IMG/VR virus record: IMGVR_UViG_3300038424_000251
Span: 1 to 64,000 of that record
Strand: one strand, 5' to 3'
Length of the DNA stretch: 64,000 nt
Part shown: positions 3,088 through 29,086 of the stretch, piece after piece
Position numbering within the stretch: the stretch's first letter is position 1
How the letters are laid out: the number at the start of each line of letters is the position of its first letter
Notes under the pieces: model-generated
Told to the model about the DNA's origin: nothing
Database searches by the model: none
The model's input: the letters and a program-made list of their open reading frames with translations, nothing else
Position numbers and translations under genes: made by a program

Positions 3088-3981
3088 TTACTTGTAAGAT
3101 TCCCTTAATAAATTTAACTTTGAATCTCTTTGTGTGATTGTTATTCCCTGTTTCTTAAAAAAGTTTTCAACAGTATTCATATCATCTTCGGTAAGCATAC
3201 CTACATCCCAATATACCATACCTGTCTTTTTACCTTCTTCTGAAAAATGAAAACGAAAACGAACATTTGACCAATTGTGTGAAAATTCAGGTTCCCCACT
3301 ATGTTCTACACCATGATATCTTGATGATGGCAACCATTTATAGACAACTTCTCCATATTTACCTATCAAACCCAATCCCCATCGCCTTTCCTCTTTAGAT
3401 TCTTTTAAGTCATGATATTTAGCAATCCATTTTTTCCTTGTTTCAGACCTATCAGATGAGTACCGATTCATCATATCTTCTGCTTGTTTTCTACTAAATC
3501 CTAAATGACCGATGAGAAAATCTTTTAGTTCTGAGGTATAAGCTCTTATTTCTTCTGGGTCACCATAATATTTGTCACCCATCATTAGTGCATCATAAGT
3601 TATCTTATTGAATAGTTTTTTATGATAATTTATTGCATGAACTAATTCGTGATAAATAACACTGTCCACATATGCAGCATATTTACTTGAAGAATTATAG
3701 CGACCATGATAGACTCCCCCTATGGTTATAGTATCATCCTTAAAATTATATTCACCATATGGTAGAGTATCTTCTGAATAATATGTGTAACGAATTCTTA
3801 TGGATAGAATTTTATTTAGAAAGACATCAATTAAATCGTTCATAGAAAGACCAAACATTAAAAGTTGTTTAGAATCATATTCTTTTGGGAATGTTTTCTG
3901 CATATAAGTTCGCAAAGGTTCTCTAAATCTTTCCAAATCTCCAAAAAGATTTTCTAATAACAATATTTTTAATTTAATCAT
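3088..3981 (-). CDS. Leader + HExxH zincin-like domain + shared C-terminal domain
   Basis: MIKLKILLLE; YHELVHAINY with downstream YYGDPEEIRAY; the C-terminal module after DLKE resembles the ends of 5322..7064 and 27977..29086. Confidence 0.6.
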   Translation of the reverse strand: MIKLKILLLENLFGDLERFREPLRTYMQKTFPKEYDSKQLLMFGLSMNDLIDVFLNKILSIRIRYTYYSEDTLPYGEYNFKDDTITIGGVYHGRYNSSSKYAAYVDSVIYHELVHAINYHKKLFNKITYDALMMGDKYYGDPEEIRAYTSELKDFLIGHLGFSRKQAEDMMNRYSSDRSETRKKWIAKYHDLKESKEERRWGLGLIGKYGEVVYKWLPSSRYHGVEHSGEPEFSHNWSNVRFRFHFSEEGKKTGMVYWDVGMLTEDDMNTVENFFKKQGITITQRDSKLNLLRESYK

Positions 3982-4441
3982 TTATTTTAGGCTTCTGTGC
4001 ATTACAACAACCATACTCATTCACTTTTTCTTCAAGTTGAAATAGGTCTGGATTGGATTTATTCAGAGATTGAAATAACATACAAATTGATGTTTTTTGG
4101 TCAAAAGAACGACAATTTTCACATCTAACTTGACGATTTACCAACCCTGCTTCTTTTGGTGTATATGAGGCAACTTCCTTTCCTTTTAAATTTGGTGACG
4201 GTTTACCATAGACATAGAAATTACAACTCATTTCACAAGTTACTTTAATTTTTCCAAGAATGGAACATGTCAATCCATCTTCACCTGTCCACATTCTACA
4301 TGTAGCGCATTGAGCAAACTTTTCCTTTGGACCTTTTGGTTCTAAATATATAAAAACTTCTCTTGTAAGTTTGTTTTTTTGTTGTTTTACTTCGGAAAAT
4401 ACTTCCAATATCAACTTTTTTATATCATTTTTATTCATCAT
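3974..4441 (-). CDS. Cys-rich protein with two HiPIP-like CxxC...C...C units
   Basis: QCATCRMW..CSILG..SCNFY and RCENCRSF..CMLF..YGCCNA; leader IKKLILEVFSE. Confidence 0.45.
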   Translation of the reverse strand: MMNKNDIKKLILEVFSEVKQQKNKLTREVFIYLEPKGPKEKFAQCATCRMWTGEDGLTCSILGKIKVTCEMSCNFYVYGKPSPNLKGKEVASYTPKEAGLVNRQVRCENCRSFDQKTSICMLFQSLNKSNPDLFQLEEKVNEYGCCNAQKPKIND

Positions 4442-5310
4442 AATTGTACAAAGAAATAGTGAACATCTTCATCTAAATCATAGGCCCAAACTATAAAGTG
4501 TCTAGTATAAGGAGATATATTTCTAGCAAATTCAAATTGATGCCTATCTATTTTTTTTCTTAAAAAATCTGGAACATCGCATCTTGATAAAAATAAATGT
4601 TTATTAACTATTTGTTTTTGACTATTAGGAATATCTTTTGGATCACCAACAAGATGTTCCATTTCTGTGGCATCCGATGCTATATAGTTTCTAAATGATG
4701 GGTCATTAAGACCTGTTTTACAATTTCCTACATAACCATACCTTTTCCCACCTTCTGTTAATACAGTTTCATTATTTTCTAATCTAAAATAAGATTTACC
4801 GCCTTGTATTGGAGAGTAACAAATTTCTCTGATTGAAACTTTTAATTTCAATCCTTCTTTTATATGAGAAAATTTTCCTTTTTGGACATAAGCTAATGTT
4901 AAATGTGGGTTATATTCCGGGTAATCATTTTCATTCAGATAAATTCCTGAAAGTTCGTTTAATTTTTTTAAAACTGGACTGTTTACTTTAAACATTGCTA
5001 CATCATATTGGGGCGATGAAACAAATTTATCTAATCCTGTAAGTTCAACAACAAAAGGTTTTTGTCCTTTAAGAAGTTGACGAACTTCCAATTCATTTAA
5101 ATCCTTCAAAAATCCATAACGAATAGTGACATGACTTTCCGTTTCTCTGCCATATTCCCCGTTTTCTACATATAAATCATTGTTATTGATTAGTTGTTTA
5201 CTAAATTTTAAAATAGAATCAGATGATTCTTTTGGAATCATAGCCATCAAACAACCTTTTTTAGCCGTTGCGTCTCTATTTTCATTTACCATTTCTTTTA
5301 GATTTATCAT
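4438..5310 (-). CDS. 2H phosphoesterase (T4 gp57B/Acb1-like) plus C-terminal module
   Basis: Two HxT motifs, SHVTIRYG and YNPHLTLAYV; leader MINLKEMVNE; second module begins after VLTE. Confidence 0.75.
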   Translation of the reverse strand: MINLKEMVNENRDATAKKGCLMAMIPKESSDSILKFSKQLINNNDLYVENGEYGRETESHVTIRYGFLKDLNELEVRQLLKGQKPFVVELTGLDKFVSSPQYDVAMFKVNSPVLKKLNELSGIYLNENDYPEYNPHLTLAYVQKGKFSHIKEGLKLKVSIREICYSPIQGGKSYFRLENNETVLTEGGKRYGYVGNCKTGLNDPSFRNYIASDATEMEHLVGDPKDIPNSQKQIVNKHLFLSRCDVPDFLRKKIDRHQFEFARNISPYTRHFIVWAYDLDEDVHYFFVQL

Positions 5311-5321
5311 AATTTTTATTA

Positions 5322-7064
5322 TTATATATGTCTAACATACGTTTTATAATCATTAAGACCTATATGTTGAGGTTTATATATTCCTTTTTTTACTAACCAA
5401 TCTTCTGCTTTATGTCTATCTTCGTCAGTTGGTGGAAATTCATTCCACAAAATTGTATTTTTTGGGGTTTCTACAAAATATCTCCATCTTGTTCCTAATG
5501 ATGTGGAACCTATTCTCCCATGTGGTAATTCAGAATGATCTACTGCCATAACATCAGGAACCATTTCATCATAAGCTTCTATATTTCCATGATAAACTAC
5601 TCCTATGTAACCACGCCTTTTATTTATATCTTTTGCTTGTTCGTATGGACTCATTATTTCACTCATAGGCTTCTTAATATTACCAAAAATCAATTTATAT
5701 AATTCTTTAACATACTGAATAAATTTTGGTTTATCCAATTCGTAAATTCTTTTAAGTTTTTTTCGAGTATCGGAATGTGCCCAATATAACATAGCTACAC
5801 TATGAGGATGAATTGATTGATGGCCAGCAATATCATCTATCAAAGCTCTGAATCCTTCTTTTTTATTTGTAGGCCAAAATTTGCTAATTATAATTTCAAT
5901 ATTATTTTTATAATCATAAAGATTGGTTTTGAATTCTATATCTCTTAATTCATGTTCTATTCTATTAAATTTGTCTCCCGGTTCTTTAACAGTTCCAAAA
6001 ACATCTACACCTCTAATAGATGGATTTCTAAACCATCTTAATGATTTTTTGGATAATCCATATTTTTTAGGAAATTTTTTACGAAATTTTTTAAGAGTAT
6101 GTCCTAAAATATCTTGCAATAAATGTCTAACTTCATGTTTAACGTCGCGTAGTTTTCTTTCCATTGATGTGTTAAATTGTTCAATTAATTCTTCTACACA
6201 AAATGTTATATAAATAGCATTTTTTCCTGAGTCATAATAATCAGTACCTCCTAATGTTTTAGGGAGGGAATTATATTCTTCGTATGTTTCTACTGCTTTA
6301 AAATAAATCCAAAATGTTTTAAAATAACCTTCTCCTTCAATACTTGGTGTTCTGTAAAAGAACATATTTTGTTTAATTTTTATTGGAAATGCCATAATAA
6401 CCATCTCACCATTAGGAGATTTAAAAGGTTTAAGAGTTTCTCCTGATTTTATTTCTTGATATTTATTACCCACAATTTTATATGGATGGGCTAATGTTCC
6501 AAAAGACCTTGCCACATACGATTGAAGCATATCAGGAGATTTAGTTTGATACTTCTTTGATTTAAGGAAGGCTTCTATAATATAACCAGCAGCAGATTTG
6601 GTGATATCTATTACTTGTTTTTCAATTTCTAATGGAATCTCAAATGCTTCATTTAATTTTTTTATTTCAGGTCTTCTAAACATCGTAGGTCCAAAAAAAC
6701 TTGAAAGACTATAATCTTTTTTTCTTCCTCTATTATGTATGAATCCTAACGATTTATAAAATTTATCTAATTTCTTTTTGTACCGTTTTTCTGCTTCAGG
6801 AGAAAGAGTAATAATTAATCCGTGTTTATCAGCAAATGATTTAATGGCTTCTATAACTTTTCTTCCTATTCCTTGTTTACGAAACTCTTTCTTTATTTTT
6901 ATATCACGTAGATGAAATATATCTTGCCTGTAGCTTATATTAAAAAATAAACTTTCTAATTGAGGATACTGATGGATTAAGGACTGACGAAAATCTTCTG
7001 TCTCTTTATCAAGGTCAGTCTTATCTCCAAATCCTTCTATTATTAATGGTTTGAGTTTTATCAT
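5322..7064 (-). CDS. Multidomain: leader + GNAT + HExxH zincin-like + shared C-terminal domain
   Basis: MIKLKPLIIE; FRKQGIG...KFYKSLGF (GNAT motifs); KHEVRHLLQD; C-terminal VDHS..RWRY..NTILW. Confidence 0.65.
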   Translation of the reverse strand: MIKLKPLIIEGFGDKTDLDKETEDFRQSLIHQYPQLESLFFNISYRQDIFHLRDIKIKKEFRKQGIGRKVIEAIKSFADKHGLIITLSPEAEKRYKKKLDKFYKSLGFIHNRGRKKDYSLSSFFGPTMFRRPEIKKLNEAFEIPLEIEKQVIDITKSAAGYIIEAFLKSKKYQTKSPDMLQSYVARSFGTLAHPYKIVGNKYQEIKSGETLKPFKSPNGEMVIMAFPIKIKQNMFFYRTPSIEGEGYFKTFWIYFKAVETYEEYNSLPKTLGGTDYYDSGKNAIYITFCVEELIEQFNTSMERKLRDVKHEVRHLLQDILGHTLKKFRKKFPKKYGLSKKSLRWFRNPSIRGVDVFGTVKEPGDKFNRIEHELRDIEFKTNLYDYKNNIEIIISKFWPTNKKEGFRALIDDIAGHQSIHPHSVAMLYWAHSDTRKKLKRIYELDKPKFIQYVKELYKLIFGNIKKPMSEIMSPYEQAKDINKRRGYIGVVYHGNIEAYDEMVPDVMAVDHSELPHGRIGSTSLGTRWRYFVETPKNTILWNEFPPTDEDRHKAEDWLVKKGIYKPQHIGLNDYKTYVRHI

Positions 7065-7065
7065 A

Positions 7066-7668
7066 TTATTTTTGTTTCATTCTTTCAAACCAATCATCTC
7101 CATAAATCTTTGCTAGTTTATCATATATTTTTTTGGTAAGATGAATTCCTGCATCGGTCATCTGACCTAATTTGTCTTTTCCTTGCAAAATGCGTTGCCT
7201 TTGTTTTATATGAAAAACTCCTAAATCTGAACCTATTCCCAGTCTTTGATATGGTTTTTCTACCCATACACCCACTGCTCCAAATTCATTTGCAGCAAAC
7301 CCTACAGGTTTGTCTTCTATAAATGCTACTACCGTTTGATTCATAACAGGCAAATTTTCTTGTCTCATCTCATTATCCGACATATAAACAGGTTCATTAT
7401 TTTTATCACGTAATATGTCACCATTTTTATCAAATTTTACATATTTCACCTTTTCATTTCTTTGTCTATATTCTACAGTATAAGGACCATGTTGTTGACT
7501 AGCTATTAATTTAGGATATTCACTTTTATTGCCAAGCCAAGACAAACCACCTTCTGATTCATATCGGGTATATGCGTTAGAAGGAATGTGTCCTGTATAA
7601 TGATACTTAAGAAAATCTTCTTTATCAGACTCTATGATATTCTCAATAATGTCTCTTAATTTAATCAT
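7066..7668 (-). CDS. Leader + GNAT-like acetyltransferase
   Basis: MIKLRDIIENIIE; VWVEKPYQRLGIG and MTDAG. Confidence 0.6.
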   Translation of the reverse strand: MIKLRDIIENIIESDKEDFLKYHYTGHIPSNAYTRYESEGGLSWLGNKSEYPKLIASQQHGPYTVEYRQRNEKVKYVKFDKNGDILRDKNNEPVYMSDNEMRQENLPVMNQTVVAFIEDKPVGFAANEFGAVGVWVEKPYQRLGIGSDLGVFHIKQRQRILQGKDKLGQMTDAGIHLTKKIYDKLAKIYGDDWFERMKQK

Positions 7669-7994
7669 GGTTGTCGTAATGTTTTAATAAATGCTGCACC
7701 TTCTGGTGTAGTAATTCCCCATACAATTTTCCATCGAGGGTGTTCTCTATGTAAATCCCTAATCATTGCGGTTGCTATACCTTTTCTTCTTTCTGATTCA
7801 ACCGTTTCCATTCCGTCAATGTAAATTACATTTTCATATGTGGAATAATCAATTTTTCCAACTTTAATTCCCCTTTTGTCGTATGCAATAAGAGTGCAAT
7901 AATTCTGACCTTTATAATTATCTCTACAATCGTGTGTAAATTCTAAAGGCTCTCCTTTTACATATTCTGGTATAAGGTGTTTTAATTTTATCAT
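7665..7994 (-). CDS. Leader + GNAT acetyltransferase
   Basis: MIKLKHLIPE; ERRKGIATAMI and TPEGAAF. Confidence 0.7.
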   Translation of the reverse strand: MIKLKHLIPEYVKGEPLEFTHDCRDNYKGQNYCTLIAYDKRGIKVGKIDYSTYENVIYIDGMETVESERRKGIATAMIRDLHREHPRWKIVWGITTPEGAAFIKTLRQP

Positions 7995-9442
7995 ATTCCA
8001 GCCACTTTCTTAGCAATTGCTAATGCTTCATCTTTGGTCAATCCGGGATTACTATACCATGCATCAGCTACAGCATTTATAATTTCTTTGAATAATGGAC
8101 CCGGTTTCAAACCAAGGTCTTGTAAATCATATCCTGTTATAGGCATTTTTGGTTTAAGAGGGACGGTTTTTAATTTTTCCAATCTTTGTCTGATATTAGT
8201 AATTTGATTAGGCATTGACGATGCTTCAGAATGAGAAATATTATCTGCATGAATTAAATTTAATATATTTTCTAACTGTTCTCCTATTTCATTACGAAAT
8301 TTCAGTAGAGTTTTATCTTTGAATTTAACTCCAGCATCACCAGCTTGTTTTAATCTCATATGATTACGAACACCCAATTTAACTGCATCAATCAATTCTC
8401 TTGGATATTTTAATCTGTTCATTACATCTTCAACAATTTTTTCACCAGCTTCCTCATGTCCATAAAAATGAACACCTTTAGTCTCGGGGTCAACTGTTTT
8501 TGTGACAGTTTTTCCTATATCATGAAATAATGCCATTAACCGTTGAACTAGTATTGGTTCGGTTTTGCTTAATACATCAAGAGTATGTTGGAATACATCA
8601 TGTTTATGATGAATATTTTGAGCCATCTTTATTGCTGGTACTAATTCAGGAATTACAAATGGTAATAGTTCTGTAATTTTTAATAATTTAATTCCTTTGG
8701 ATGGAGAGCCAGTGATAAGAATTTTATTCAATTCGTCACGAATTCTTTCTTGGGAAATATTTTTAAGTTGAGAAGCATTTTTCTTTAAGCCTCTTATCAT
8801 AAATAAAGGAAGTGTCCAATCATATTTAACCGCAAAACGAACTGCTCTTAGCATACGGAGTGGGTCATCAGTAAAGATTTTATCGGGATTTAAAGGTGTT
8901 CTTATGATACCAGCTTTAATATCATCTTTGCCTTTACCTGTTAAATCAAGAATTTCTCCTGTGGATAAATCTTTTAATAAACTATTTACAGTAAAATCTC
9001 TTCTTTCAACATCATCTTTGAGTTCGCCGCCGGTAACTATTGGTTTTCTTGAACCCGGAATATATTTTTCTTTTCTTGGCATTACAGCTTCGATATCTAT
9101 ATCACTCAAATCTATACCATCATGAACAACACCACGAAGATTAAATTTAGCTGTTCCAAATCTTGGAAAAATTACAGGGTTTGAACTTGGGTCTTCTTCA
9201 GTTTCTCCACCTTTATAAGCTCCAACTTTTTTAGTAATCCATTTAGCAAATTCAATTCCACCATTTGGAGAATTAACAAGTAAATCCAAATCTTTCGGGT
9301 CTTTACCCATAAATTCATCGCGGACATATCCACCTGCTATGAATACTTTACCTTCCCATTCTGTTTCTTGGATGGTCTTTTTAATAAAGTCTTCTACAGC
9401 TTTTTCTTTTACACCTTCTAAAATAAGTTGTTTTATGCTCAT
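7991..9442 (-). CDS. cca: CCA-adding tRNA nucleotidyltransferase / poly(A) polymerase family with HD domain
   Basis: GGYVRD, DLD, RRDFTVN, DDPLRMLRAVRF, ERIRDEL, HDIGK. The start at 9442 gives the leader MSIKQLILE; the ORF track starts at 9478. Confidence 0.85.
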   Translation of the reverse strand: MSIKQLILEGVKEKAVEDFIKKTIQETEWEGKVFIAGGYVRDEFMGKDPKDLDLLVNSPNGGIEFAKWITKKVGAYKGGETEEDPSSNPVIFPRFGTAKFNLRGVVHDGIDLSDIDIEAVMPRKEKYIPGSRKPIVTGGELKDDVERRDFTVNSLLKDLSTGEILDLTGKGKDDIKAGIIRTPLNPDKIFTDDPLRMLRAVRFAVKYDWTLPLFMIRGLKKNASQLKNISQERIRDELNKILITGSPSKGIKLLKITELLPFVIPELVPAIKMAQNIHHKHDVFQHTLDVLSKTEPILVQRLMALFHDIGKTVTKTVDPETKGVHFYGHEEAGEKIVEDVMNRLKYPRELIDAVKLGVRNHMRLKQAGDAGVKFKDKTLLKFRNEIGEQLENILNLIHADNISHSEASSMPNQITNIRQRLEKLKTVPLKPKMPITGYDLQDLGLKPGPLFKEIINAVADAWYSNPGLTKDEALAIAKKVAGI

Positions 9443-9481
9443 TAAAATATAATTTTTTATTATACCATTATTTTTCATATT

Positions 9482-10033
9482 TTACAATAAAAATCTATTA
9501 AAGAACGCTTCATTTCTACCAGTCAATTTTTTTCCAGCAGAACTTCTAATATACTCTTTTTTTGCTGTATTCCAATTATTTCTCAATACTGCATCCGTAA
9601 ATTTTGGAAATTTTTCAAGACCGCCTAAACTGAAAGAAAAATCCATCAACATTTCCTCTTGTTTTTTGGATAACATAATATTTACATTATATGTTTTTTT
9701 GATATAATTGCGCATTCTTTGTTTTGCTATTTGTAAATCTTGAATAAGAATTTTTTCAGCAGTTTTTTGGTCTATACCATTTTTGAAATTGATAATTTCG
9801 TCATCTTCCAATTTATGACCATAAGCTATGTTCCATCCGGCTATATCTTTGTAAGGAAACCACAATTTTTTTTGCTTATCAAATCCAGCATATATTGAAT
9901 TTTCAACGGTTTTAATATATTTTATGAAATCGGGAGAAAATTCCTGATGCTGAATATGAATAGCAGGTGGTTGTGTTGCTGGTGACAAAGCTTCAATCAT
10001 AAATTCTTCAATAATTTCCCTTAGTTTAATCAT
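9482..10033 (-). CDS. Leader + phage lysozyme-like muramidase
   Basis: MIKLREIIEE; IKTVE...YKDIAGWNIAYGHKL...AEKILIQDL...LMDFSFSLG..L.KFPKF (GH24-like). Confidence 0.7.
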   Translation of the reverse strand: MIKLREIIEEFMIEALSPATQPPAIHIQHQEFSPDFIKYIKTVENSIYAGFDKQKKLWFPYKDIAGWNIAYGHKLEDDEIINFKNGIDQKTAEKILIQDLQIAKQRMRNYIKKTYNVNIMLSKKQEEMLMDFSFSLGGLEKFPKFTDAVLRNNWNTAKKEYIRSSAGKKLTGRNEAFFNRFLL

Positions 10034-10083
10034 ATCTATAAATAGGTGTGACTTTAGATGAAATATTCATATTTATAAGAGAT

Positions 10084-11295: not shown

Positions 11296-11296
11296 T

Positions 11297-11734
11297 ATGA
11301 AAAAAGAACAATTAAAAATATTGGTAAGAGAAGTCTTGAAGGAAATGGTTTATAGTAGAAGAAGCAGCTCTTCGGACACTTACGAAGGATATGACATTGA
11401 ATTTGAATCGTTGATTATACCCGGCATTTCTACAGAAAATGATACAGTATCGGTATTGGTGAGTATTGAATATGATTTTGACCCCGGATATGAGCCAAAA
11501 GGTATGTTCGGTCCTCCAGAATGTTCAGACCCCGGAGAAGGAGCTTCTATAAATGTAACGGATTATTGGCCTACAAGCTTGAGAGTATCCAATGAAGCTG
11601 GCAAAGAAACCGAATATGAACCAGATAAATTAACTGTTGACCAGCAAGAAATTCTTAAAAAGGCTATAGAAGACCACATGTATCAAAATGAAAATAAAAT
11701 TGATGATATGATTTTAAATACTTTAGGATTTTAG
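11297..11734 (+). CDS. Acidic hypothetical protein with LKILVREVLKE leader
   Basis: Leader motif followed by an acidic domain. Confidence 0.55.
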   Translation: MKKEQLKILVREVLKEMVYSRRSSSSDTYEGYDIEFESLIIPGISTENDTVSVLVSIEYDFDPGYEPKGMFGPPECSDPGEGASINVTDYWPTSLRVSNEAGKETEYEPDKLTVDQQEILKKAIEDHMYQNENKIDDMILNTLGF

Positions 11735-11762
11735 TTATAAATCTGATTAATGAGTAAATAAT

Positions 11763-11984: not shown

Positions 11985-11986
11985 TT

Positions 11987-12460: not shown

Positions 12461-12465
12461 ACAAA

Positions 12466-12804: not shown

Positions 12805-12806
12805 TA

Positions 12807-19764: not shown

Positions 19765-22700
19765 ATGCCAATTACAGAAGGTGGAACATTTAGTCCGGAC
19801 CGAAATATTGTGTCACCCGGAGTTTTCACAAGAGAAAATGACGTGTCAGGTGTAGCAGCAGGAGTTGCTAATATTGGTGGTGCCATTGTAGCCCCGTTTG
19901 CAAAAGGTCCAGCCTATTCGCCTGTAATTTTAACGGATGCAAATACGTTAGCTAATGAATTTGGAAACCCTGATGGAATTTATTATGGTCCATATACTGC
20001 TGCTCAATATTTACAAGAGCAAGGAATTGTAACCATTTGTAGAGTTGGTGGATTGACAGGATATCAGCAAAATTATCCATTTGCTATATGGGCTGTCAAA
20101 GGTCAATATACAAGAAGTAGTTCATTTGGTGCATTAAATAGTGGTAGTTCTTATGTTTATTTTTATGGTAGTGCATCAAATCAATACAGTGAAAGTATTA
20201 GTTGGGCATCACCTACAAGTAAATCCATGACAATTAATACTGCTAGTGTTACCATCACTTTTGTTGGTGGTGCTGCAGATGATATTACTCTTAGCCCAAC
20301 TGCAAATAGTGGTAGTTTGCTATATTATGGACAAACTATTACTTTGGGAACGGCCACTTTAATTAATGCTACGGCTAGTGTTTCACAATCACAATTTTCA
20401 TCGTCAATTGCTGCTGGAACATTTTCAGCATCAATCGTTGGTCCTGTTCCAATCAGTTTTCCAAATGCAAGTTATCAATTTCAAAGTTTAGCTTTGATTA
20501 GTGCTTCATTGAGTGTTAATTTGGGTACTTGTGGATTCCCATTAATTTTACTTAGTGGTGTGATTACTGGTGCTTTTGGTCAATATGTTGGTTTTACTTC
20601 TGCTGGTTCAGCATCGTTTAATCCATGTATCCTACCAAACGGTGCATGGACAAGTCAATCAAATGCTGATATGAGATTACTTGCTGTATTAGCAGATACG
20701 CAAGCAGGTGGTATTCAAAATCTTGTAGCGCCGGGATTCTTGGGTTCCTCATTAAGTTCGACTAACCCAATTACTCCAAGTAATCCTTCAACAACTATAC
20801 CATTGGATTTCAATCTTACTCTCATGAATAGTAACAGTACAACGCCTTACGGAGTGTACCAATTTTCATTGAATAGCGAAGACCCAAGTTATATTATTAA
20901 CGTTTTTGGTAATGACCCAACTGCTGGTAATCCGGTCAAGCAAGTTGCTGGTCAGAAAATTGAAGCGGCTTATTTGTATTCAATTTATGAGGATGTTATT
21001 GCCGATGTGGTAGCTTCAAGTAGTTATTGGGCTATATATGGTTCGGCTCTTCCATCAGGTTCACAAACGGGTCAATCACTTAATTTTACAGACCAATATT
21101 CTCGTAATTTGAATGAAGGTGATAGTGTATTTTCAATTCAAGAAGCAATCACTCCTTGGGTTCTTTCTCAAGCTATTGCTCCTTATCAGAGTGGCTCTGC
21201 TCCACATCGTTATGAATTGTTTAGAATTCATACTATAGCTGATGGAACTTATACCAATACTCAATTCAAAGTTCAAATAAGTAATATTAAGTTAGCAGGC
21301 ACCGTTGCTGGTAGTAATTGGGGTTCATTCACTCTTACACTTCGCAAATATAGTGATACTGATAAGCGTCCTATTATTGTTGAACAATACAACAATTTGA
21401 ATCTTAATCCTGATGATGCTAACTTTATTGCTCGTGTAATTGGTGACATGTATAGTTATATCAATTTTAACGGTAAAGTAATAGAATTTGGAACTTACTC
21501 AAATAATAGTAATAATATTAGGGTAGAAATGTCAACTAACAATTATCCAGTAAGTGCTATTCCTTATGGATTTGAAGCATATATTACACCAACAAATGGA
21601 GAAATGGGTTTCTGGACTCCTAGAATGAAATATACAAAAGCTTCTGTTTATGGATTAAGTCCGGGCAAATATCCATCAGGAATTACTTTCAATGATGCTC
21701 CTACAGGTGCGGATGCTGAATTATTCAATCTATATCCACAGCTTTCGTCAGGCGTCGGCGCTGCTGATGATAATTTACAATATTTTGCTCCGATTCCATC
21801 ATTTGCCTCAAGCGGTGGAAGTTATAGTAGTATTGGAAGAAATACTATATTTGCTTTAGACCTTGATTATGAGTTGTATGGAGTTAGTACAGGTTTTTTC
21901 CTTAGTGGAAGTAATATTGTTCCTACAGTTTATGACCCTGTAAATGAACCAACTTATATTAAAATGAGAAACTTTGTATTTGGGTTCCAAGGTGGATTTG
22001 ATGGTCAAAGCCCATCAATTCCAATTAACGTAGGTGGAGATATTATCGCAGGAAATACTCAAGGGTTGGACTGCACGAATGTAAATTCTGCTGGTTCAAT
22101 TGGCTATGCTCAAGCAATTGCAGCTCTTGGTAATGCTGACCAATATGATATTAATCTTATTGTGACACCGGGTATAGTATATGAAGAACACCCATACGTC
22201 ACTAATTTGGTTGTTGATATGTGTGAAGCTCGTGGTGATTGCTTCTATATTATGGACACGTATGTTGACAGTGGTAATCCATCAACAGGTCAAATTACTC
22301 AGGTTGTATCTTATGCTTCCGAATTTGATACAAACTATGCTGCTACTTATTATCCTTGGATTAAAATCCTTGACACGTATAATAATCTTATAGTCACCGT
22401 TCCACCATCTGTTATATTACCATCAGTTTATGCAGCCAGCGACAAAGTAGCCGCAGAATGGTTTGCACCTGCTGGATTAAATCGTGGTGGTATTTCAATC
22501 GCTACACAAGTAACGGATAGAACTACACACGAAGAACGTGATACCCTATATGAAGGTAAAGTCAATCCGATTGCATCATTTCCGGGTTCAGGTATTGTTG
22601 TATGGGGTCAAAAGACTTTGCAAAACGCGAATACAGCATTGAATAGAATTAATGTTCGCAGGTTATTAATTAATATCAAGAAATTCTTTGCTTCAACAGC

Positions 22701-22962
22701 TAAATATTTGGTATTTGAACAAAATGTAGCTTCTACACGCAACAAATTTTTGAGTATTGTTAATCCATATTTGGAATCAGTTCAACAAAGGTCAGGTCTA
22801 TATGCTTTCTTTGTGAAAATGGATGACGCTAATAATACACCTGATATTATTGATCGAAATATCCTTTATGGGCAAATTTATCTACAACCAACCAAGACGG
22901 CAGAATTTATTGTTCTTGATTTCAATATTTTGCCGACAGGTGCAAGTTTTCCTAACGCTTAA
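19765..22962 (+). CDS. Contractile tail sheath protein
   Basis: VSPGVFTREND, YYPWIKI, WFAPAGLNRG, RDTLYEGKVNPI, WGQKTLQ, RINVRRLL, QPTKTAEFIVLDF. Confidence 0.95.
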   Translation: MPITEGGTFSPDRNIVSPGVFTRENDVSGVAAGVANIGGAIVAPFAKGPAYSPVILTDANTLANEFGNPDGIYYGPYTAAQYLQEQGIVTICRVGGLTGYQQNYPFAIWAVKGQYTRSSSFGALNSGSSYVYFYGSASNQYSESISWASPTSKSMTINTASVTITFVGGAADDITLSPTANSGSLLYYGQTITLGTATLINATASVSQSQFSSSIAAGTFSASIVGPVPISFPNASYQFQSLALISASLSVNLGTCGFPLILLSGVITGAFGQYVGFTSAGSASFNPCILPNGAWTSQSNADMRLLAVLADTQAGGIQNLVAPGFLGSSLSSTNPITPSNPSTTIPLDFNLTLMNSNSTTPYGVYQFSLNSEDPSYIINVFGNDPTAGNPVKQVAGQKIEAAYLYSIYEDVIADVVASSSYWAIYGSALPSGSQTGQSLNFTDQYSRNLNEGDSVFSIQEAITPWVLSQAIAPYQSGSAPHRYELFRIHTIADGTYTNTQFKVQISNIKLAGTVAGSNWGSFTLTLRKYSDTDKRPIIVEQYNNLNLNPDDANFIARVIGDMYSYINFNGKVIEFGTYSNNSNNIRVEMSTNNYPVSAIPYGFEAYITPTNGEMGFWTPRMKYTKASVYGLSPGKYPSGITFNDAPTGADAELFNLYPQLSSGVGAADDNLQYFAPIPSFASSGGSYSSIGRNTIFALDLDYELYGVSTGFFLSGSNIVPTVYDPVNEPTYIKMRNFVFGFQGGFDGQSPSIPINVGGDIIAGNTQGLDCTNVNSAGSIGYAQAIAALGNADQYDINLIVTPGIVYEEHPYVTNLVVDMCEARGDCFYIMDTYVDSGNPSTGQITQVVSYASEFDTNYAATYYPWIKILDTYNNLIVTVPPSVILPSVYAASDKVAAEWFAPAGLNRGGISIATQVTDRTTHEERDTLYEGKVNPIASFPGSGIVVWGQKTLQNANTALNRINVRRLLINIKKFFASTAKYLVFEQNVASTRNKFLSIVNPYLESVQQRSGLYAFFVKMDDANNTPDIIDRNILYGQIYLQPTKTAEFIVLDFNILPTGASFPNA

Positions 22963-23050: not shown

Positions 23051-23635
23051 ATGAATCCTGAAACAAATTTACCTAGTTCTAATATTCCAAAAGGGGTGGG
23101 AGGTTTAGATGTTAGAGGCCAAATTATTAGAATGAACGTGAGAGCTGCATCAGCTCTGGTAATGGCTAAAGATACAGGTCGATTATTGCTTGCTTTTCGT
23201 TCCACTTCTGCCCTTGGACATATTAAAGAACAAAAATGGAATCTATGGGGTGGAAAAGTAGATTTAGAGGAAAGTCCAGAAATGAGTGCGGTTAAATGGA
23301 CAAAAAGACAAACGAGTTATACTGGACATTTTACCGATTCAATACCATTATATACATTTTTTAGTACTACTACAAATTTTAGATATTATATTTTTTTATT
23401 AGTGGTAGAAAAAGAATTTACACCAACTATAGAAGAAGGCGGTTCAATATTGAATTATAAATGGGTAGAATATGGTGAATGGCCTGAACTTTTGCATCCT
23501 ATAGTTAAAGAATTATTTATTAAAGTAAGTTCTAAGTTAAAAGGAATAATAGAAAAAATCATTATCAAAGAAAGTTTAGCAAAAGAATATATTACAATTA
23601 AGCTTAAAGAATTAATAAAAGAATTGTGGCAATAG
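23051..23635 (+). CDS. Nudix-fold protein with degenerate Nudix box
   Basis: GRLLLAFRS...WNLWGGKVDLEESPEMSA, but KWTKRQ replaces REUxEE; the leader-like motif IKLKELIKE is at the C-terminus. Confidence 0.65.
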   Translation: MNPETNLPSSNIPKGVGGLDVRGQIIRMNVRAASALVMAKDTGRLLLAFRSTSALGHIKEQKWNLWGGKVDLEESPEMSAVKWTKRQTSYTGHFTDSIPLYTFFSTTTNFRYYIFLLVVEKEFTPTIEEGGSILNYKWVEYGEWPELLHPIVKELFIKVSSKLKGIIEKIIIKESLAKEYITIKLKELIKELWQ

Positions 23636-23639
23636 TGGT

Positions 23640-23972
23640 ATGATTAAGTTAAAAGACATGATACCTAAAAAGTATTTTTATCATATTACACCAAGGAAAA
23701 ATATTCCAAATATGAAAATACATGGTATAGTTCCCAAACCAGATAATCCTGCTCCTTTTTGTGATAAAGTAGTTTGTTTATTTGATAATAGGACATCAAT
23801 AGAAACTGCATTTACGAGTTGGTTGTTAGGTAAATTTAATAAAAATGAGCCAATGGTTCTTTTAACTATAGACCCTACGGGGTTAGACATACATTCATCT
23901 GAAATAGCATATGAATTTAGAGTTTTTAAACCCATACCTTGGAAAAATGTTGTAAAAGTTGAAAATATATGA
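23640..23972 (+). CDS. Leader + ADP-ribosyltransferase-like fold
   Basis: MIKLKDMIP; FYHITPRKNI.NM..HGI.P, VCLF, LLTID, YEFRV..PIP pattern of small ART/Tpt1-like domains. Confidence 0.55.
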   Translation: MIKLKDMIPKKYFYHITPRKNIPNMKIHGIVPKPDNPAPFCDKVVCLFDNRTSIETAFTSWLLGKFNKNEPMVLLTIDPTGLDIHSSEIAYEFRVFKPIPWKNVVKVENI

Positions 23973-24880
23973 TTAAACTAAAAAACATTTTAACTGAAGT
24001 AGCTGCAGATAGGTCATGGAATTCTCAATTATGGAACTCTGATTTATGGCAATCAAATTTATGGAACTCTGATATATGGAAATCTCATATATGGAACACA
24101 GATTTGTGGAAATCTGATTTATGGAAGTCTGATATATGGAATCCTAGTTCAACTACTACTGCTGCTACATCAAAAGAACTGACTGAAATTGAACAACATA
24201 AACCTAATGAAGTAGAAGCTTTGCCGGGTATTTTTGTGGACCCTTCAATTATAAAACATATTCAAATATTAAATAAACTTGGATTTCACACAGTTTTTTC
24301 TTGTTCTGGAATTTCATATGACCATCCCAATTTGAAGGCTGGTTCTCGTAGTGGTTATGTAATGTTTAGACATGGTTTAACTCCTAATCAAATAACGAGA
24401 ATATACAAAGCTACACTTGGTATAAAGGGGGTAAATTATGATCCGATTCATCTTAGGTCAGTTCCTTATGTTAGTTTTAGGGGTAGTGATTCTGAAAGAT
24501 TGAATGGTTGGAACCAATTTGTGAAGAATTTAATGAAGCGTAGAGTATATTATAAAAAATTAGGTAAAATCAAGGAATCAGAAGAAAAACATTCACGTAA
24601 AGGGAAATGTTATGAGCTTACCGGTAGATATGTTTCTACTCACCCCGATTCCATTCTTGTTCATGGTAAATTAGTAAATCCGTTTGTGAAAGGATTACCA
24701 GAAATAGAGCATGCATGGGTGGAAATTGGTGATAAAATTTTTGACCCCATAATGGATATAACTTGGCCAAAACAAGCATATGAGTCTTTATTTCATGCTA
24801 AACCATATAAAAAATATACTCAGGAGGAAGTTCTTAAAATTACTCTTAGAACAGAGCATTGGGGGCCTTGGGATGTATGA
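23969..24880 (+). CDS. Multidomain: leader + W-pentapeptide repeat + SCSG domain + Cys-His-Asp (transglutaminase-like) domain
   Basis: MIKLKNILTE; (LWxSD) repeats; VDPSI..IQILNKLGFHTVFSCSG; GKCYE...HAWVE...IFDP. Confidence 0.55.
   Translation: MIKLKNILTEVAADRSWNSQLWNSDLWQSNLWNSDIWKSHIWNTDLWKSDLWKSDIWNPSSTTTAATSKELTEIEQHKPNEVEALPGIFVDPSIIKHIQILNKLGFHTVFSCSGISYDHPNLKAGSRSGYVMFRHGLTPNQITRIYKATLGIKGVNYDPIHLRSVPYVSFRGSDSERLNGWNQFVKNLMKRRVYYKKLGKIKESEEKHSRKGKCYELTGRYVSTHPDSILVHGKLVNPFVKGLPEIEHAWVEIGDKIFDPIMDITWPKQAYESLFHAKPYKKYTQEEVLKITLRTEHWGPWDV
24014..24142 (+). repeat. In-frame 15-bp tandem repeat (~9 units, consensus ttatggaa(c/a)tctgat)
   Basis: Directly visible; encodes SWNSQ-LWNSD-LWQSN-LWNSD-IWKSH-IWNTD-LWKSD-LWKSD-IWN. 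Confidence 0.9.
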
Positions 24881-26833: not shown

Positions 26834-26857
26834 ACCCATCATTAGCTAGCATAATTT

Positions 26858-27976
26858 ATGAAAATATCCAAAATTAAAGAAATAATTGATGAAGTTATAT
26901 CTGAAGAAATGGGGGAGGGATTTGGTTATGTCTATGCGAAAGACAGAGCTAAAGACCCAAAATCCATTCCCGGAGAACACTGGCGAATTAAATTTCAAAG
27001 CGCTCACGATTTAAAGAAACATGGTAATACGGAAAAATCAAAAGTGTCAGAAATTATCTATGAAATTCCTCGAAAGATTGGAATAAATGCAATGGGTGAC
27101 GAAATAGGTAGAACTTCCACTGACGAAGGAGAACTCAGGAATATGATTGGTAATATGAAACCCGGCCAATCTATTCTTTTTCATGGTAAAGAAGGTATAA
27201 AAGGACCTTTAATTTATATTGTTAAACGTGAGGGTATTGGATATGAAGTTGAGAATCATAGAAAACAAAAGCAAGAAATCACCAATGCTGACCAACTCGA
27301 TTTAATTATCAGTGGTATTGCAAAACAAGCAAACATTTTATTTAGATTTTGGAAACAAAATAAACCATCCACATATTCAGCTCCGAAATTACCAGTTGTA
27401 TCTAAAGAACAAATTAGGGAAATAATTAAAGAATTGATTGATGAAATGTGGATTGCATGGGAAGAAGATAAAAATGACAACAAAGATATAACAGAAAGTA
27501 AATATATGAATAATAAAAAAGAATTCTTAAGAGATATAATTCGTGAAGCTATTCAAGAAGTAGAATTTGAAGATGCTCCTGATGAAAAATATCAAGAAGA
27601 ACAAGAAATACTGTCTATGAAGAGAATACAATCATATGCTCATTGGATAAAAGAAAATCTTAAAGATGCTGCTAGTGAAATTGGTGGAGTAATTCAGAAA
27701 ATAGTAACCGAAATTGATGGTCTTGTTTCGGCTCATGAAAAAGGGAAGGAAATTTCACCAGTCAATGTTCACGAAGTAGCTCCTCCGGGGTGGGAAGGAA
27801 CAGTAAAAGCTATGAAGAAACATTCTGTTGGTGGGGCTAAAAGGTGGGCTCCAAAAAAGAAAAAAGAAGAAACCGTGGATGTGGAAGAAGCCAAAAAGAA
27901 GAAAAAGATTACTAATCCATATAAATTAGCATGGTGGATGAAAGGTAAAGGTTATAAATCACATAAACAAGATTAA
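26858..27976 (+). CDS. Modular protein with three KEIIxE-type motifs (putative internal head polyprotein)
   Basis: MKISKIKEIIDEVISE, IREIIKELIDE, LRDIIREAIQE; C-terminal VAPPGWEGTVKAMKKH...NPYKLAWWMK. Confidence 0.55.
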   Translation: MKISKIKEIIDEVISEEMGEGFGYVYAKDRAKDPKSIPGEHWRIKFQSAHDLKKHGNTEKSKVSEIIYEIPRKIGINAMGDEIGRTSTDEGELRNMIGNMKPGQSILFHGKEGIKGPLIYIVKREGIGYEVENHRKQKQEITNADQLDLIISGIAKQANILFRFWKQNKPSTYSAPKLPVVSKEQIREIIKELIDEMWIAWEEDKNDNKDITESKYMNNKKEFLRDIIREAIQEVEFEDAPDEKYQEEQEILSMKRIQSYAHWIKENLKDAASEIGGVIQKIVTEIDGLVSAHEKGKEISPVNVHEVAPPGWEGTVKAMKKHSVGGAKRWAPKKKKEETVDVEEAKKKKKITNPYKLAWWMKGKGYKSHKQD

Positions 27977-29086
27977 GTGAAATTTCGTGTTTACAATAAA
28001 ATATTGGACCCGAACTTATGGAAAGGCAAAAAGCTTAAACCTGAAGTTAGAGAATCACTGTTGAAAGTTGCCGAAGATTTTTATAACTCCACAGATTTAA
28101 AAGGTGAAATTCATAACATATTGTTATTAGGTTCATCAGCTAATTATAATTGGACCCCCGTAAGTGATATAGATGTGCACGTTGTCATAGATATTGCTGA
28201 AGAAAAAATCAACGAAGAATATGCTCGGAAATTCATGGATGGATTAGCATTCAAGTGGAATACCGAACATGATATTGAAGTAAAAGGTCATCCTGTTGAA
28301 ATGTATATTCAGGACATAAGAGAACCAAACAGTTCTCCACAACAAGCAAGACCGGGAGCTTCAATTTATTCATTATATGATGGTAAATGGTTGTTAGAGC
28401 CAAATCCACAAAATATCAAATTGGATTCTGATAAAATTCGTAAGAAATTTCAACTTATAAATAAGAAAATTGAAACTCTAATTCAAACTGAAAATATTGA
28501 ACAATTAAAATCGTTGATGAAATCTATAAGAAATTATCGTAATGCTGGATTAGCAAAAAGTGGAGAATTCAGTGTTGAAAATATTGTATTTAAAGCTCTA
28601 CGACATAGTGGCGACCTTAAAAAAATGAAGGATACCATCAATACTATATATGATAGAAAAACAAGTTTACCTGAAATGGGCAATATTATCCCCAACAAGA
28701 AAACACCATCAAACAATTTAAACGAACAAAAAATAGATAAACCATTTATTGTTGTTGGTGTAGCTTTTGGGGATTTAAGTGTGAAAAGTGATATAAGTTA
28801 TGAGGTTGGGTCTGTATCTCACCCTGATATAGATGATGAACGGGGTGATATCAAATGGAGATATAAATCAAATACTAACACAATATATTGGTCAACTTAT
28901 AGATTAGAACCGACAAGGGACCAAAGAGCAGAAGTTATAGCTCATCTTCGTAATAAATACAATGTGATTAATCCAAAGGAAACAATTGACCCCGACAAGT
29001 ATTTTTTTGATGCTCATACTATAGATGAATGGATTGATTCTTTTTCGTTTGATTCTTTTCTGTTAAAAAAGTGTGAAAAATCATAA
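27977..29086 (+). CDS. Pol-beta-superfamily nucleotidyltransferase + shared C-terminal domain
   Basis: LLGSSANYNWTPVSDIDVHVV, VEMYIQD, GEFSVENIVFKALR; appended module after NLNE. Confidence 0.7.
   Translation: MKFRVYNKILDPNLWKGKKLKPEVRESLLKVAEDFYNSTDLKGEIHNILLLGSSANYNWTPVSDIDVHVVIDIAEEKINEEYARKFMDGLAFKWNTEHDIEVKGHPVEMYIQDIREPNSSPQQARPGASIYSLYDGKWLLEPNPQNIKLDSDKIRKKFQLINKKIETLIQTENIEQLKSLMKSIRNYRNAGLAKSGEFSVENIVFKALRHSGDLKKMKDTINTIYDRKTSLPEMGNIIPNKKTPSNNLNEQKIDKPFIVVGVAFGDLSVKSDISYEVGSVSHPDIDDERGDIKWRYKSNTNTIYWSTYRLEPTRDQRAEVIAHLRNKYNVINPKETIDPDKYFFDAHTIDEWIDSFSFDSFLLKKCEKS

What the first reader, a model, noticed from the sequence alone, without database searches (positions are those of the whole stretch)
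3088..29000. Unnamed ~85-aa domain appended to three different cargo proteins
The C-termini of 3088..3981 (approx. 3088-3400), 5322..7064 (approx. 5322-5660) and 27977..29086 (approx. 28727-29000) align by eye. Shared pattern: G-hydrophobic strand; VEHS / VDHS / VSHP; RFRF / RWRY / KWRY; GMVYW / NTILW / NTIYW; LTEDD / PTDED / PTRDQ; VENFFKKQGI / AEDWLVKKGI / VIAHLRNKY. Each starts just after an x-x-E junction. An invariant His, Arg and Trp suggest a ligand-binding or catalytic site. I do not recognise the family.
Basis: seen in the sequence. Interest (0 to 1): 0.72.

Follow-up and report, generated by a model that had tools for sequence, protein, structure and literature searches.

The report
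New shared domain in phage head cargo
Three unrelated enzymes of a 365-kb T4-like jumbo phage end in the same small protein domain, which matches no family or fold library searched; it is bracketed by sites of the kind the phage's head protease cuts, so it is probably released as a separate small protein and delivered into the host with the DNA.

Summary
The three C-terminal segments are copies of one 85-100-residue alpha/beta domain. A profile built only from foreign sequences hits exactly four of 1,851 ORFs in this genome: the three named and a fourth at genome 159838-161307. A profile of the four finds 114 protein clusters among 1.84 billion. Gly, His, Arg and Trp are near-invariant, and the AlphaFold model has pLDDT 90.8.

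The domain matches nothing significant in Pfam, PHROGs, NCBIfam, PDB, AFDB clusters, BFVD or 50,697 GenBank phages. Elsewhere it stands alone, sits at either end or between enzymes, or forms tandem arrays of up to six. Its partners are those of 'polyvalent' injected phage proteins: nucleotidyltransferase, GNAT, ART-PolyVal, CCA enzyme, Nudix and lysozyme.

The genome has T4-type portal, capsid and gp21-type prohead protease genes. Two carriers start with a 10-residue MIKLKxLLxE peptide in the register of T4's capsid-targeting sequence. The domain is flanked by [LIVM]-x-E, the gp21 cleavage motif; this held at a fixed register in all 20 members of one subfamily that were inspected.

Best reading (inferred): these genes are polyproteins, and the domain is itself a head-packaged, protease-released binding module. 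Its ligand and function remain unknown.

The parts
3091..3399 (-). Domain copy A (residues 195-297 of the 297-aa protein 3088..3981).
   Evidence: Foreign-only HMM E 3e-9, envelope 196-290. Alignments. Coordinates.
3400..3408 (-). L-K-E junction directly before copy A. Candidate prohead-protease site.
   Evidence: Read from the sequence. Motif class [LIVM]-x-E is enriched at domain flanks. Cleavage is inferred.
3952..3981 (-). N-terminal decapeptide MIKLKILLLE, resembling a T4 capsid-targeting sequence.
   Evidence: The T4 register (targeting residues 4 and 7, processing residues 8 and 10) is from PMC9026906.
3409..3951 (-). N-terminal part of protein A, with an HExxH motif (HELVH at 3637-3651). 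Possible zincin-like peptidase, not confirmed.
   Evidence: Pfam gives only a weak match, Peptidase_M91 at E 0.096. No PDB sequence match.
5325..5657 (-). Domain copy B with its conserved I-x-S-P-Y lead-in (residues 470-580 of the 580-aa protein 5322..7064).
   Evidence: Foreign-only HMM E 2e-20. AlphaFold model pLDDT 90.8, pTM 0.85. Lead-in shown.
5658..5666 (-). M-S-E junction before copy B. It is in the same register as the end of the N-terminal targeting peptide in stand-alone homologues.
   Evidence: All 20 subfamily members inspected carry [LIVM]-x-E at this position (two shifted by 1-2 residues).
7035..7064 (-). N-terminal decapeptide MIKLKPLIIE, resembling a capsid-targeting sequence.
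6735..6935 (-). GNAT acetyltransferase domain of protein B (residues 44-110). A second HExxH motif (HEVRH) lies at 6123-6137.
   Evidence: Pfam Acetyltransf_7 E 3.7e-7. Motif coordinates.
27977..28675 (+). Pol-beta-type nucleotidyltransferase with a helical bundle (residues 1-233 of the 369-aa protein). It ends in S-L-P-E, whose Glu is in a near-invariant column of the family alignment.
   Evidence: phrog_36119 E 2e-43. 20-sequence alignment with Glu233 listed as nearly invariant. Model pLDDT 89.3, with residues 235-248 at pLDDT <50. Nearest folds are ANT(9) and CD-NTases at E 4e-4 but TM only 0.28.
28718..28726 (+). L-N-E junction directly before copy C. A first candidate site, L-P-E, lies at 28667-28675.
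28727..29029 (+). Domain copy C (residues 251-351), ending in A-H-T-I-D-E. This is the post-domain H-x-[LIVM]-x-E motif (usually Ala or Gly before the His).
   Evidence: Foreign-only HMM E 2.5e-17. H-x-[LIVM]-x-E occurs in 19/129 downstream windows against 1.4% background.
29030..29083 (+). 18-residue C-terminal tail after the putative last site.
   Evidence: Read from the sequence. No function assigned.

Best explanation
The three segments are copies of one real protein domain of about 85-100 residues that matches no family in the libraries searched. A fourth copy lies at genome 159838-161307. The predicted fold runs: beta-hairpin, loop with the invariant His, second hairpin carrying R-W-R-Y and the invariant Trp, helix, strand, helix.

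It is a mobile module of phage proteins that are packed into the head and delivered into the host, that is, 'polyvalent' or internal-protein-type effectors.

This phage has a T4-type head machinery. Two of the carriers start with a 10-residue MIKLKxLLxE peptide that has the register of T4's capsid-targeting sequence. The domain is bracketed by [L/I/V/M]-x-E, the motif cut by T4 gp21-type prohead proteases, and the genome encodes such a protease.

The carrier genes are therefore most likely polyproteins. After prohead assembly the protease would separate the enzyme part from the domain, and tandem copies from each other. The mature ~100-residue domain would then be a cargo in its own right. I take it to be a small non-catalytic binding protein built around the His/Arg/Trp site. 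It would act in the newly infected cell, most likely against a host defence component or on a nucleotide-type ligand.

Shown: homology, a confident fold, the architectures, the motif positions and enrichments, and the protease, portal and capsid genes.

Inferred: packaging, cleavage, and binding rather than catalysis.
For: **The domain is real and conserved.** The fold model is confident at pLDDT 90.8.

**It behaves as an independent module.**
- It occurs as stand-alone proteins of 83-136 aa, at the N-terminus, at the C-terminus, between enzymes, and in tandem arrays of 2-6 copies.
- In a close relative (L007, neck protein 63% identical) it is a 125-aa stand-alone gene. It also occurs twice there between a 2H phosphoesterase and a CCA/HD enzyme in one 886-aa protein.

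**Its partners are those of injected polyvalent proteins.** They include ART-PolyVal, GNAT, nucleotidyltransferase, PolyA_pol+HD, Hydrolase_2, Nudix, InPase and LPD1. PMC5512222 describes this class.

**The head machinery is T4-like.** Peptidase_S77 at E 1.7e-27, Gp23 and Portal_T4.

**The N-terminal peptide is strongly enriched.** Hydrophobic residues at positions 4, 7 and 8 with Glu at 10 occur in 9 of 559 ORFs against 0.65 expected. Eight of the nine are in this window. The same pattern occurs in 22 of 114 database homologues. T4's rules are from PMC9026906.

**The junctions are conserved.**
- All 20 B-subfamily members inspected have [LIVM]-x-E before I-x-S-P-[Y/H], at a fixed register in 18 and shifted by 1-2 residues in two. 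This holds whether that Glu ends the N-terminal peptide or lies inside a fusion protein.
- The Glu ending the nucleotidyltransferase core is nearly invariant in 20 sequences. In the model of the window's own protein the residues just after it (235-248) have pLDDT <50.
- H-x-[LIVM]-x-E after the domain is about 11-fold enriched. [LIVM]-x-E occurs in 61-70% of flanks against 34% background.

**Binding is more likely than catalysis.**
- Only His and Arg are invariant polar residues.
- Copies occur in diverged tandem arrays.
- Net charge is near zero, median pI 6.6.
Against: - There is no virion proteomics; the phage is known only from peat and wetland metagenomes. Packaging and cleavage are therefore inferences.
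- [LIVM]-x-E is common in this Glu/Leu/Ile-rich proteome (34% of 30-residue windows).
- The nucleotidyltransferase carrier and the fourth copy lack the N-terminal peptide.
- The fourth copy lies among NAD-metabolism genes, not virion genes.
- No ligand, target or structural relative was found.
- An invariant His-Arg pair could also be catalytic.
- Conservation of the junction motif among homologues could reflect some other constraint.
Confidence: 0.5

Rival explanations
1. The domain stays attached and acts as a targeting or substrate-recognition module for the fused enzymes. It might bind an RNA end, a nucleotide or a common host protein, bringing nucleotidyltransferase, GNAT, CCA-type and ART domains to their substrate.
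For: - By far the commonest partner is one nucleotidyltransferase family, at about 20 of the 114 hits, followed by 1-5 copies.
- Several partners act on RNA or nucleotides: PolyA_pol+HD, Nudix and 2H phosphoesterase.
- Invariant His/Arg with aromatic residues would suit a phosphate or base ligand.
Against: - Stand-alone forms carrying only a targeting peptide exist.
- The partners are too diverse for one shared substrate.
- The same nucleotidyltransferase occurs in cyanophages, Lak phages and huge phages, where the matches stop at the NTase core; the domain was not seen there.
- The domain is not basic.
- Conserved protease-type sites separate it from its partners.
Confidence: 0.2
2. It is an assembly adaptor. 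The domain binds the scaffolding core or the capsid interior, or other copies of itself, so that proteins lacking an N-terminal targeting peptide are loaded into proheads. The protease then removes it. It has no role in the host.
For: - The nucleotidyltransferase family lacks the MIKLK peptide yet lies between the sheath and tube genes here and in L005.
- T4 Alt and gp21 also have C-terminal propeptides (PMC9026906).
- Protease-type sites flank the domain.
Against: - Proteins A and B already carry an N-terminal targeting peptide, as do the stand-alone forms, which makes a second targeting device redundant.
- A 100-residue folded domain with an invariant His/Arg/Trp site in up to six diverged copies is excessive for a propeptide.
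- The fourth copy heads a protein in a metabolic gene cluster.
Confidence: 0.15
3. It is a very small enzyme, such as a phosphoesterase or transferase that uses the invariant His and Arg.
For: - His and Arg are near-invariant.
- The B subfamily has further conserved polar residues around the His, in a D-H-S-E motif.
- Iyer et al. regard several uncharacterised polyvalent-protein domains as possibly enzymatic.
Against: - Tandem arrays of up to six diverged copies are unusual for enzymes.
- Outside one subfamily only two polar positions are conserved.
- No fold match to any enzyme family reaches significance.
Confidence: 0.08
4. The similarity is due to chance or composition, and there is no shared domain.
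For: Pairwise phmmer E-values are only 0.1-1.
Against: - The foreign-only profile hits exactly the four ORFs at E 3e-9 to 2e-20.
- 38 clusters score E<=1e-10 in 1.84 billion proteins.
- The AlphaFold model is confident.
Confidence: 0.01

Closest known systems
Uncharacterised 'large polyvalent-protein-associated domains' (LPD1-40) of phage and conjugative-element polyvalent proteins (Iyer, Burroughs, Anand, de Souza, Aravind 2017, PMC5512222)
   Same: - It is a small mobile domain of unknown function.
- It is fused in many combinations to ART-PolyVal, GNAT, nucleotidyltransferase, peptidoglycan hydrolase, Nudix, InPase and LPD1.
- It also occurs as a solo gene next to virion genes.
   Different: - It matches none of the LPD models held in Pfam, nor any other Pfam model.
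- It often forms tandem arrays.
- Here the predicted processing enzyme is the T4-type prohead protease acting at [LIVM]-x-E. The 2017 paper proposed zincin metallopeptidases instead.
- Identity with an LPD that never entered Pfam could not be excluded, because the supplement is not held.
T4 internal head proteins IPI/IPII/IPIII and Alt, with their capsid-targeting sequence (PMC9026906)
   Same: - There is a 10-residue N-terminal peptide with hydrophobic residues at positions 4 and 7 and L/I-x-E at positions 8-10.
- A gp21-type protease gene is present.
- The products would be small and would travel with the DNA.
- Alt is trimmed at both ends.
   Different: - There is no sequence or fold similarity to T4 proteins, and no PDB match.
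- The peptide is MIKLKxLLxE, not T4's.
- Here several modules appear to be strung into polyproteins, and the set of enzymes is much larger.
Processed ejection / inner-body proteins of giant phages (phiKZ, 201phi2-1, SPN3US)
   Same: - Many head-internal proteins are cut after Glu by a gp21-related protease (PMC9026906).
   Different: - Those phages use S/A-x-E sites and belong to a different lineage.
- No homology to this domain was detected in 50,697 GenBank phage records.
Gelsolin / ADF-H fold
   Same: It is the best, though weak, structural resemblance: a five-stranded sheet packed against a helix. VIA Z is 4.8 and Foldseek TM about 0.4.
   Different: - The scores are below the tool's own noise level (Z under 8).
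- Sequence identity is 5-14%.
- No shared motifs.
- I do not regard it as a relative.

Membership tests
Polyvalent-protein accessory domain (LPD-type, Iyer et al. 2017) | Occurs in phage or mobile-element proteins that combine several unrelated enzymatic domains. | tested here: met
   Pfam scans of 63 and 21 full-length carriers found ART-PolyVal (3+5), GNAT, NTase, PolyA_pol+HD, Hydrolase_2, Nudix, InPase, LPD1 and DUF7178.
Polyvalent-protein accessory domain (LPD-type, Iyer et al. 2017) | Also found solo, next to phage structural genes. | tested here: met
   Stand-alone proteins of 83-136 aa exist. In L007 the 125-aa gene lies in an enzyme island beside the neck-protein gene of a T4-like phage.
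Polyvalent-protein accessory domain (LPD-type, Iyer et al. 2017) | Matches one of the published LPD1-40 profiles. | tested here: inconclusive
   No member matches any Pfam model, including the LPD models held there, at a meaningful E-value. The LPDs that never entered Pfam could not be checked.
T4-type capsid-targeted internal protein | N-terminal peptide of about 10 residues ending in L/I-x-E. | tested here: met
   Met for proteins 3088..3981 and 5322..7064 and for 22 of 114 homologues. Not met for 27977..29086 or for the fourth copy.
T4-type capsid-targeted internal protein | The genome encodes a gp21-type prohead protease and a T4-type head. | tested here: met
   PF03420 E 1.7e-27, PF07068 E 1.3e-59, PF07230 E 3.5e-69.
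T4-type capsid-targeted internal protein | Protein is present in mature heads and cut at the predicted Glu. | not testable with these tools
   Needs virion mass spectrometry. The phage is uncultured and known from peat/wetland metagenomes.
T4-type capsid-targeted internal protein | Homology to T4 IPI/IPII/IPIII or Alt. | tested here: not met
   No PDB sequence or fold match and no Pfam match.
   Nothing significant in PDB by sequence profile, Foldseek or VIA-align. No sponge appears in the listed top matches.
   The ligand job was not folded and gives no evidence either way.
Gelsolin/ADF-H fold | Significant structural superposition over the whole domain. | tested here: not met
   Best Z 4.8, TM 0.33-0.42, Foldseek E >= 0.12.

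The most novel reading that the evidence does not exclude
The domain is a new-fold, head-packaged 'internal protein' that the prohead protease cuts out of polyproteins. It acts in the first moments of infection as an injected binder, either an inhibitor or a sponge, against host immunity. The diverged tandem copies would form a multi-specific cassette. The MIKLKxLLxE peptide would be a general address label that lets a whole clade of peat, wetland and other environmental T4-like jumbo phages load dozens of enzymes into the capsid.
Probability: 0.25. Interest if true: 0.75.

Novelty: new member of a known kind. Interest (0 to 1): 0.55.

Why it matters
What phages inject along with their DNA is poorly known outside T4, P1, N4 and the phiKZ group. 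This work adds three things.

- **A widespread domain family with a confident model.** It has no structural neighbour in the libraries searched and four near-invariant residues, which makes it a well-defined target for structure and ligand work.
- **Sequence-level evidence that uncultured T4-like jumbo phages use a conserved 10-residue address peptide and prohead-protease sites.** With these they would package a large, shuffled set of enzymes as polyproteins. The set includes an Acb1-like 2H phosphoesterase, GNATs, a CCA/HD enzyme, nucleotidyltransferases and a lysozyme.
- **Testable rules.** The peptide and the [LIVM]-x-E junctions could be used to predict the injected proteome of such phages from sequence alone.

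If the domain turns out to be an anti-defence binder, it would be a new class of injected counter-defence.

Tried and rejected
- **Pairwise phmmer of the three segments.** Too weak to prove homology; profiles were needed.
- **Family libraries.** Pfam, PHROGs and NCBIfam scans of 92 domain copies gave no family. The seven weak Pro-kuma_activ hits (best E 0.021) are noise-level.
- **Sequence and fold searches.** Nothing significant came from:
  - the PDB sequence profile;
  - Foldseek against PDB;
  - VIA-align wide;
  - AFDB clusters;
  - ESM Atlas by shape;
  - BFVD.
  I do not accept the gelsolin, RNase-PH or cap-binding-domain resemblances (Z <= 4.8).
- **ESM Atlas by features.** Scores were <= 0.87 with low recognition. 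The scattered ADP-ribosyltransferase labels are leads only. The fold is too small for an ART, and none appears in the listed top matches of the fold searches.
- **Complex prediction with a cyclic dinucleotide.** Not folded; no evidence either way.
- **The search for homologous proteins.** Found nothing named.
- **tblastn of two domain copies against GenBank phages.** No match.
- **Generic nucleic-acid binder.** Disfavoured by the near-neutral charge.
- **P0006** (a 3,764-aa Vibrio Ig-like protein with 15 short partial matches). Treated as a repeat-driven false positive, because it gave no domain in the local re-search.
- **Nucleotidyltransferase partner.** Its fold only loosely resembles ANT and CD-NTase enzymes (TM 0.28), so it says little about substrate.


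Full report
**Setting.** The window is the first 64 kb of a single 365,299-bp virus record with 33% G+C and a CheckV completeness of 100%. The same sequence is held by at least 24 peat and wetland metagenome runs from 2017-2021. The genome has:
- a T4-type portal at 336.8-338.0 kb;
- a gp21-type prohead protease at 342.8-343.4 kb (PF03420, E 1.7e-27);
- a Gp23-type major capsid protein at 354.1-355.9 kb.

The window carries the tail sheath (19765-22962), tail tube, tape measure and fibre genes. There is no close relative among 50,697 GenBank phage records.

The three proteins are:
- 3088..3981(-), 297 aa, with an HExxH motif;
- 5322..7064(-), 580 aa, with a GNAT domain and a second HExxH motif;
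- 27977..29086(+), 369 aa, a Pol-beta-type nucleotidyltransferase (phrog_36119).

The N-terminal parts of the first two are unrelated to each other by BLASTP. The third carries a distinct nucleotidyltransferase.

Taken pairwise, the C-terminal segments are only weakly similar, with E 0.1-1. The profile evidence settles it:
- An HMM of the three finds a held-out fourth copy at the N-terminus of genome ORF 159838-161307, with E 1.5e-7.
- The four-copy profile finds 114 clusters at E<=1e-3, 38 of them at <=1e-10, among 1.84 billion representative proteins.
- An HMM built only from 71 foreign copies, each under 40% identical to any copy here, hits exactly these four ORFs of 1,851. The E-values run from 2e-20 to 3e-9, and nothing else scores E<10.

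Across 92 aligned copies, Gly12, His34, Arg52 and Trp64 are 97-99% conserved (numbering of window:5322-5636:-). Trp/Phe51, Tyr/Phe53, Val77 and Leu81 are strongly conserved.

AlphaFold2 on that alignment gives pLDDT 90.8 and pTM 0.85. The order of elements is strand-strand, loop with the His, strand-strand, helix, strand, helix.

Each copy begins right after a Glu.

**Is the family known?** Not in any library I could search.
- Family libraries: no match in Pfam, PHROGs or NCBIfam.
- Sequence searches: no PDB profile match and no tblastn match in GenBank phages.
- Fold searches gave nothing above noise:
  - Foldseek against PDB: best E 0.12.
  - VIA-align wide: best Z 4.8, to gelsolin.
  - AFDB clusters: best E 0.08, with TM at most 0.50.
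  - ESM Atlas: best TM 0.56, to an unnamed cluster.
  - BFVD: nothing.
- Of the ten clusters looked up, nine come only from metagenome assemblies and have no meaningful name. The tenth is the Vibrio protein I treat as a false positive.

**Architectures.** The domain behaves as a free-standing module. It occurs:
- as stand-alone proteins of 83-136 aa;
- at the N-terminus or the C-terminus of larger proteins;
- in the middle of proteins of 2,000-3,400 aa;
- in tandem arrays of two to six copies, with copies in one protein only about 20-30% identical.

Its partners, from Pfam scans of 84 carriers, are one nucleotidyltransferase family (the commonest, about 20 proteins), GNATs, ART-PolyVal (8), PolyA_pol+HD (4), Hydrolase_2, Nudix, InPase, LPD1, DUF7178 and others. 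This is the domain vocabulary of the 'polyvalent proteins' of Iyer et al. 2017. Those authors argued that such proteins are packaged and injected with the DNA. They also listed 40 uncharacterised accessory domains, some of them solo genes next to virion genes (PMC5512222).

A close relative (locus L007, neck protein 63% identical) shows the shuffling directly. Beside the neck gene it has:
- one 699-aa protein combining Nudix, ART-PolyVal and lysozyme;
- one 886-aa protein with a 2H phosphoesterase, two copies of the domain and a CCA/HD enzyme;
- a 125-aa stand-alone copy;
- a GNAT.

In the window, the corresponding island (2541-10033, minus strand, beside the homologous neck gene at 10048-11295) has the same enzymes as separate genes.

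In another relative (L005), the nucleotidyltransferase gene keeps its place between the sheath and tube genes but carries three copies instead of one.

**The N-terminal peptide.** Proteins 3088..3981 and 5322..7064 begin MIKLKILLLE and MIKLKPLIIE. The strict pattern is hydrophobic at positions 4, 7 and 8 with Glu at 10. It occurs at the N-terminus of 9 of 559 ORFs of at least 80 aa, against 0.65 expected from internal positions. Eight of the nine are in the window. A looser pattern gives 35 against 8. The same peptide starts 22 of the 114 database homologues.

T4's capsid-targeting sequence is also 10 residues long. Targeting depends mainly on residues 4 and 7 and processing on residues 8 and 10, and gp21 cuts after L/I-x-E (PMC9026906). 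The fit is close, but it is an inference. I found no literature on this peptide.

In the subfamily of copy B, all 20 members inspected carry [LIVM]-x-E before a conserved I-x-S-P-[Y/H]...RG[Y/F]IG lead-in, at a fixed register in 18 and shifted by 1-2 residues in two. In the stand-alone proteins that Glu is residue 10 of the N-terminal peptide. In fusion proteins it lies inside the chain, for example P-M-S-E in the window. Cleavage at that Glu would give the same mature product in both cases.

In the nucleotidyltransferase family:
- The core ends in S-[LIV]-x-E, with the Glu nearly invariant in 20 sequences.
- In the model of the window's own protein the residues just after it (235-248) have pLDDT <50.
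- Repeats are often followed by H-x-[LIVM]-x-E, usually with Ala or Gly before the His. This occurs in 19 of 129 downstream windows against 1.4% background. The window has A-H-T-I-D-E at 29012-29029.

Overall, [LIVM]-x-E is present in 61-70% of flanks against 34% of control windows.

**Interpretation.** I think the carriers are polyproteins. They would be addressed to the prohead, at least those with the peptide. The prohead protease would then cut them at the junctions, so that enzyme and domain end up as separate polypeptides in the head and are ejected with the DNA.

On this reading the domain is itself a cargo. Several features point to a binding module rather than an enzyme or a generic nucleic-acid binder:
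- It has only two invariant polar residues.
- It forms diverged tandem arrays.
- Its charge is near neutral, with median pI 6.6.

I cannot name the ligand or target.

Three facts sit less well with this picture:
- The nucleotidyltransferase carrier lacks the peptide.
- The fourth copy also lacks the peptide.
- The fourth copy heads a 489-aa protein of otherwise unknown content. It lies among genes for NAD synthase, an NMN-adenylyltransferase-like protein, Nudix, Hsp20 and dCMP deaminase. That gene order is kept in another contig.

**Rivals.**
- A substrate-targeting module that stays attached to its enzyme.
- A packaging adaptor that the protease removes.
- A tiny enzyme.

They are weighed in the structured fields.

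**What failed.** The ligand-docking job was not folded. Word-indexed homologue searches gave nothing named.

**Verdict.** The domain matches no family or fold in the libraries searched and is widespread in metagenomes. It belongs to the known class of phage head-packaged or polyvalent effector modules. The function is inferred, not shown.

Noticed in passing
window 2541-13199, 23640-24880, 26858-30952; genome 351120-351422, 357613-358002, 359345-359626: Many ORFs start with MIKLKxLLxE or a variant (MKKSQLKxLIKE, MKISKIKEIIDE). The strict pattern occurs in 9/559 ORFs against 0.65 expected, and the loose pattern in 35 against 8. It looks like a T4-type capsid-targeting peptide shared by a whole set of putative head cargo proteins, and it also starts 22/114 database homologues.
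   Followed up: partly
window 2541-10033 (minus strand): An island of peptide-bearing enzymes lies beside the neck-protein gene (10048-11295). It holds:
- an HExxH protein;
- a Cys-rich protein;
- a 2H phosphoesterase with an Acb1 (anti-CBASS) match just under cut-off (4438-5310, E 1.4e-5);
- GNAT proteins (5322-7064, 7066-7668, 7665-7994);
- a CCA/poly(A) polymerase with an HD domain (7991-9478);
- a phage lysozyme (9482-10033).

The same modules are fused differently in relative L007.
   Followed up: partly
window 23051-23635: The protein encoded at 23051-23635 ends in I-K-L-K-E-L-I-K-E-L-W-Q. This is a copy of the N-terminal address motif placed at its C-terminus, just before the next gene (23640), which starts MIKLKDMIPK. 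It is unexplained and may be a remnant of a gene fusion or split.
   Followed up: no
window 23969-24880: After its MIKLK peptide, this 303-aa protein has about eight pentapeptide repeats of the form [DNQ]-[LI]-W-[NKQ]-S (Trp every fifth residue). It has no Pfam match.
   Followed up: no
window 27974-27979: The nucleotidyltransferase gene starts with GTG immediately after the stop codon of the upstream 372-aa peptide-bearing gene (26858-27976). In relative L005 the two genes overlap by one base. Translational coupling is likely.
   Followed up: no
window 125-487 and 2007-2537; 14386-16989: Two paralogous small proteins share a C-terminal half, with near-identical ends (...LPSYYE-[VI]-VW-[VI]-[LM]-RIK). 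The 867-aa fibre-like protein has many Ser-rich S-S-S-Y-x-x-S-S-S-W-A-P repeats.
   Followed up: no
genome 153655-166250 (locus L001): An NAD-related gene cluster surrounds the fourth domain copy:
- glutamine-dependent NAD synthase;
- cytidylyltransferase-like (NMNAT-like) protein;
- Nudix;
- a weak isochorismatase match;
- Hsp20, dCMP deaminase, an HNH endonuclease and a VWA protein.

The order NAD synthase - NMNAT-like - domain protein - Hsp20 recurs in contig L008, which also carries a Gad2-family gene.
   Followed up: partly
genome 140315-140536: There is a short sub-threshold match to the N-terminus of Gp23 (E 1.8e-5) interrupted by three stop codons. It may be a decayed capsid-gene fragment.
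   Followed up: no
P0006 (database hit, Vibrio ponticus WP_123783193.1): This 3,764-aa Ig-like/RTX-type protein scored E 3e-21 through 15 short partial matches to profile positions 37-71 only. It gave no domain in the local re-search and is probably a repeat-driven false positive of the profile.
   Followed up: partly
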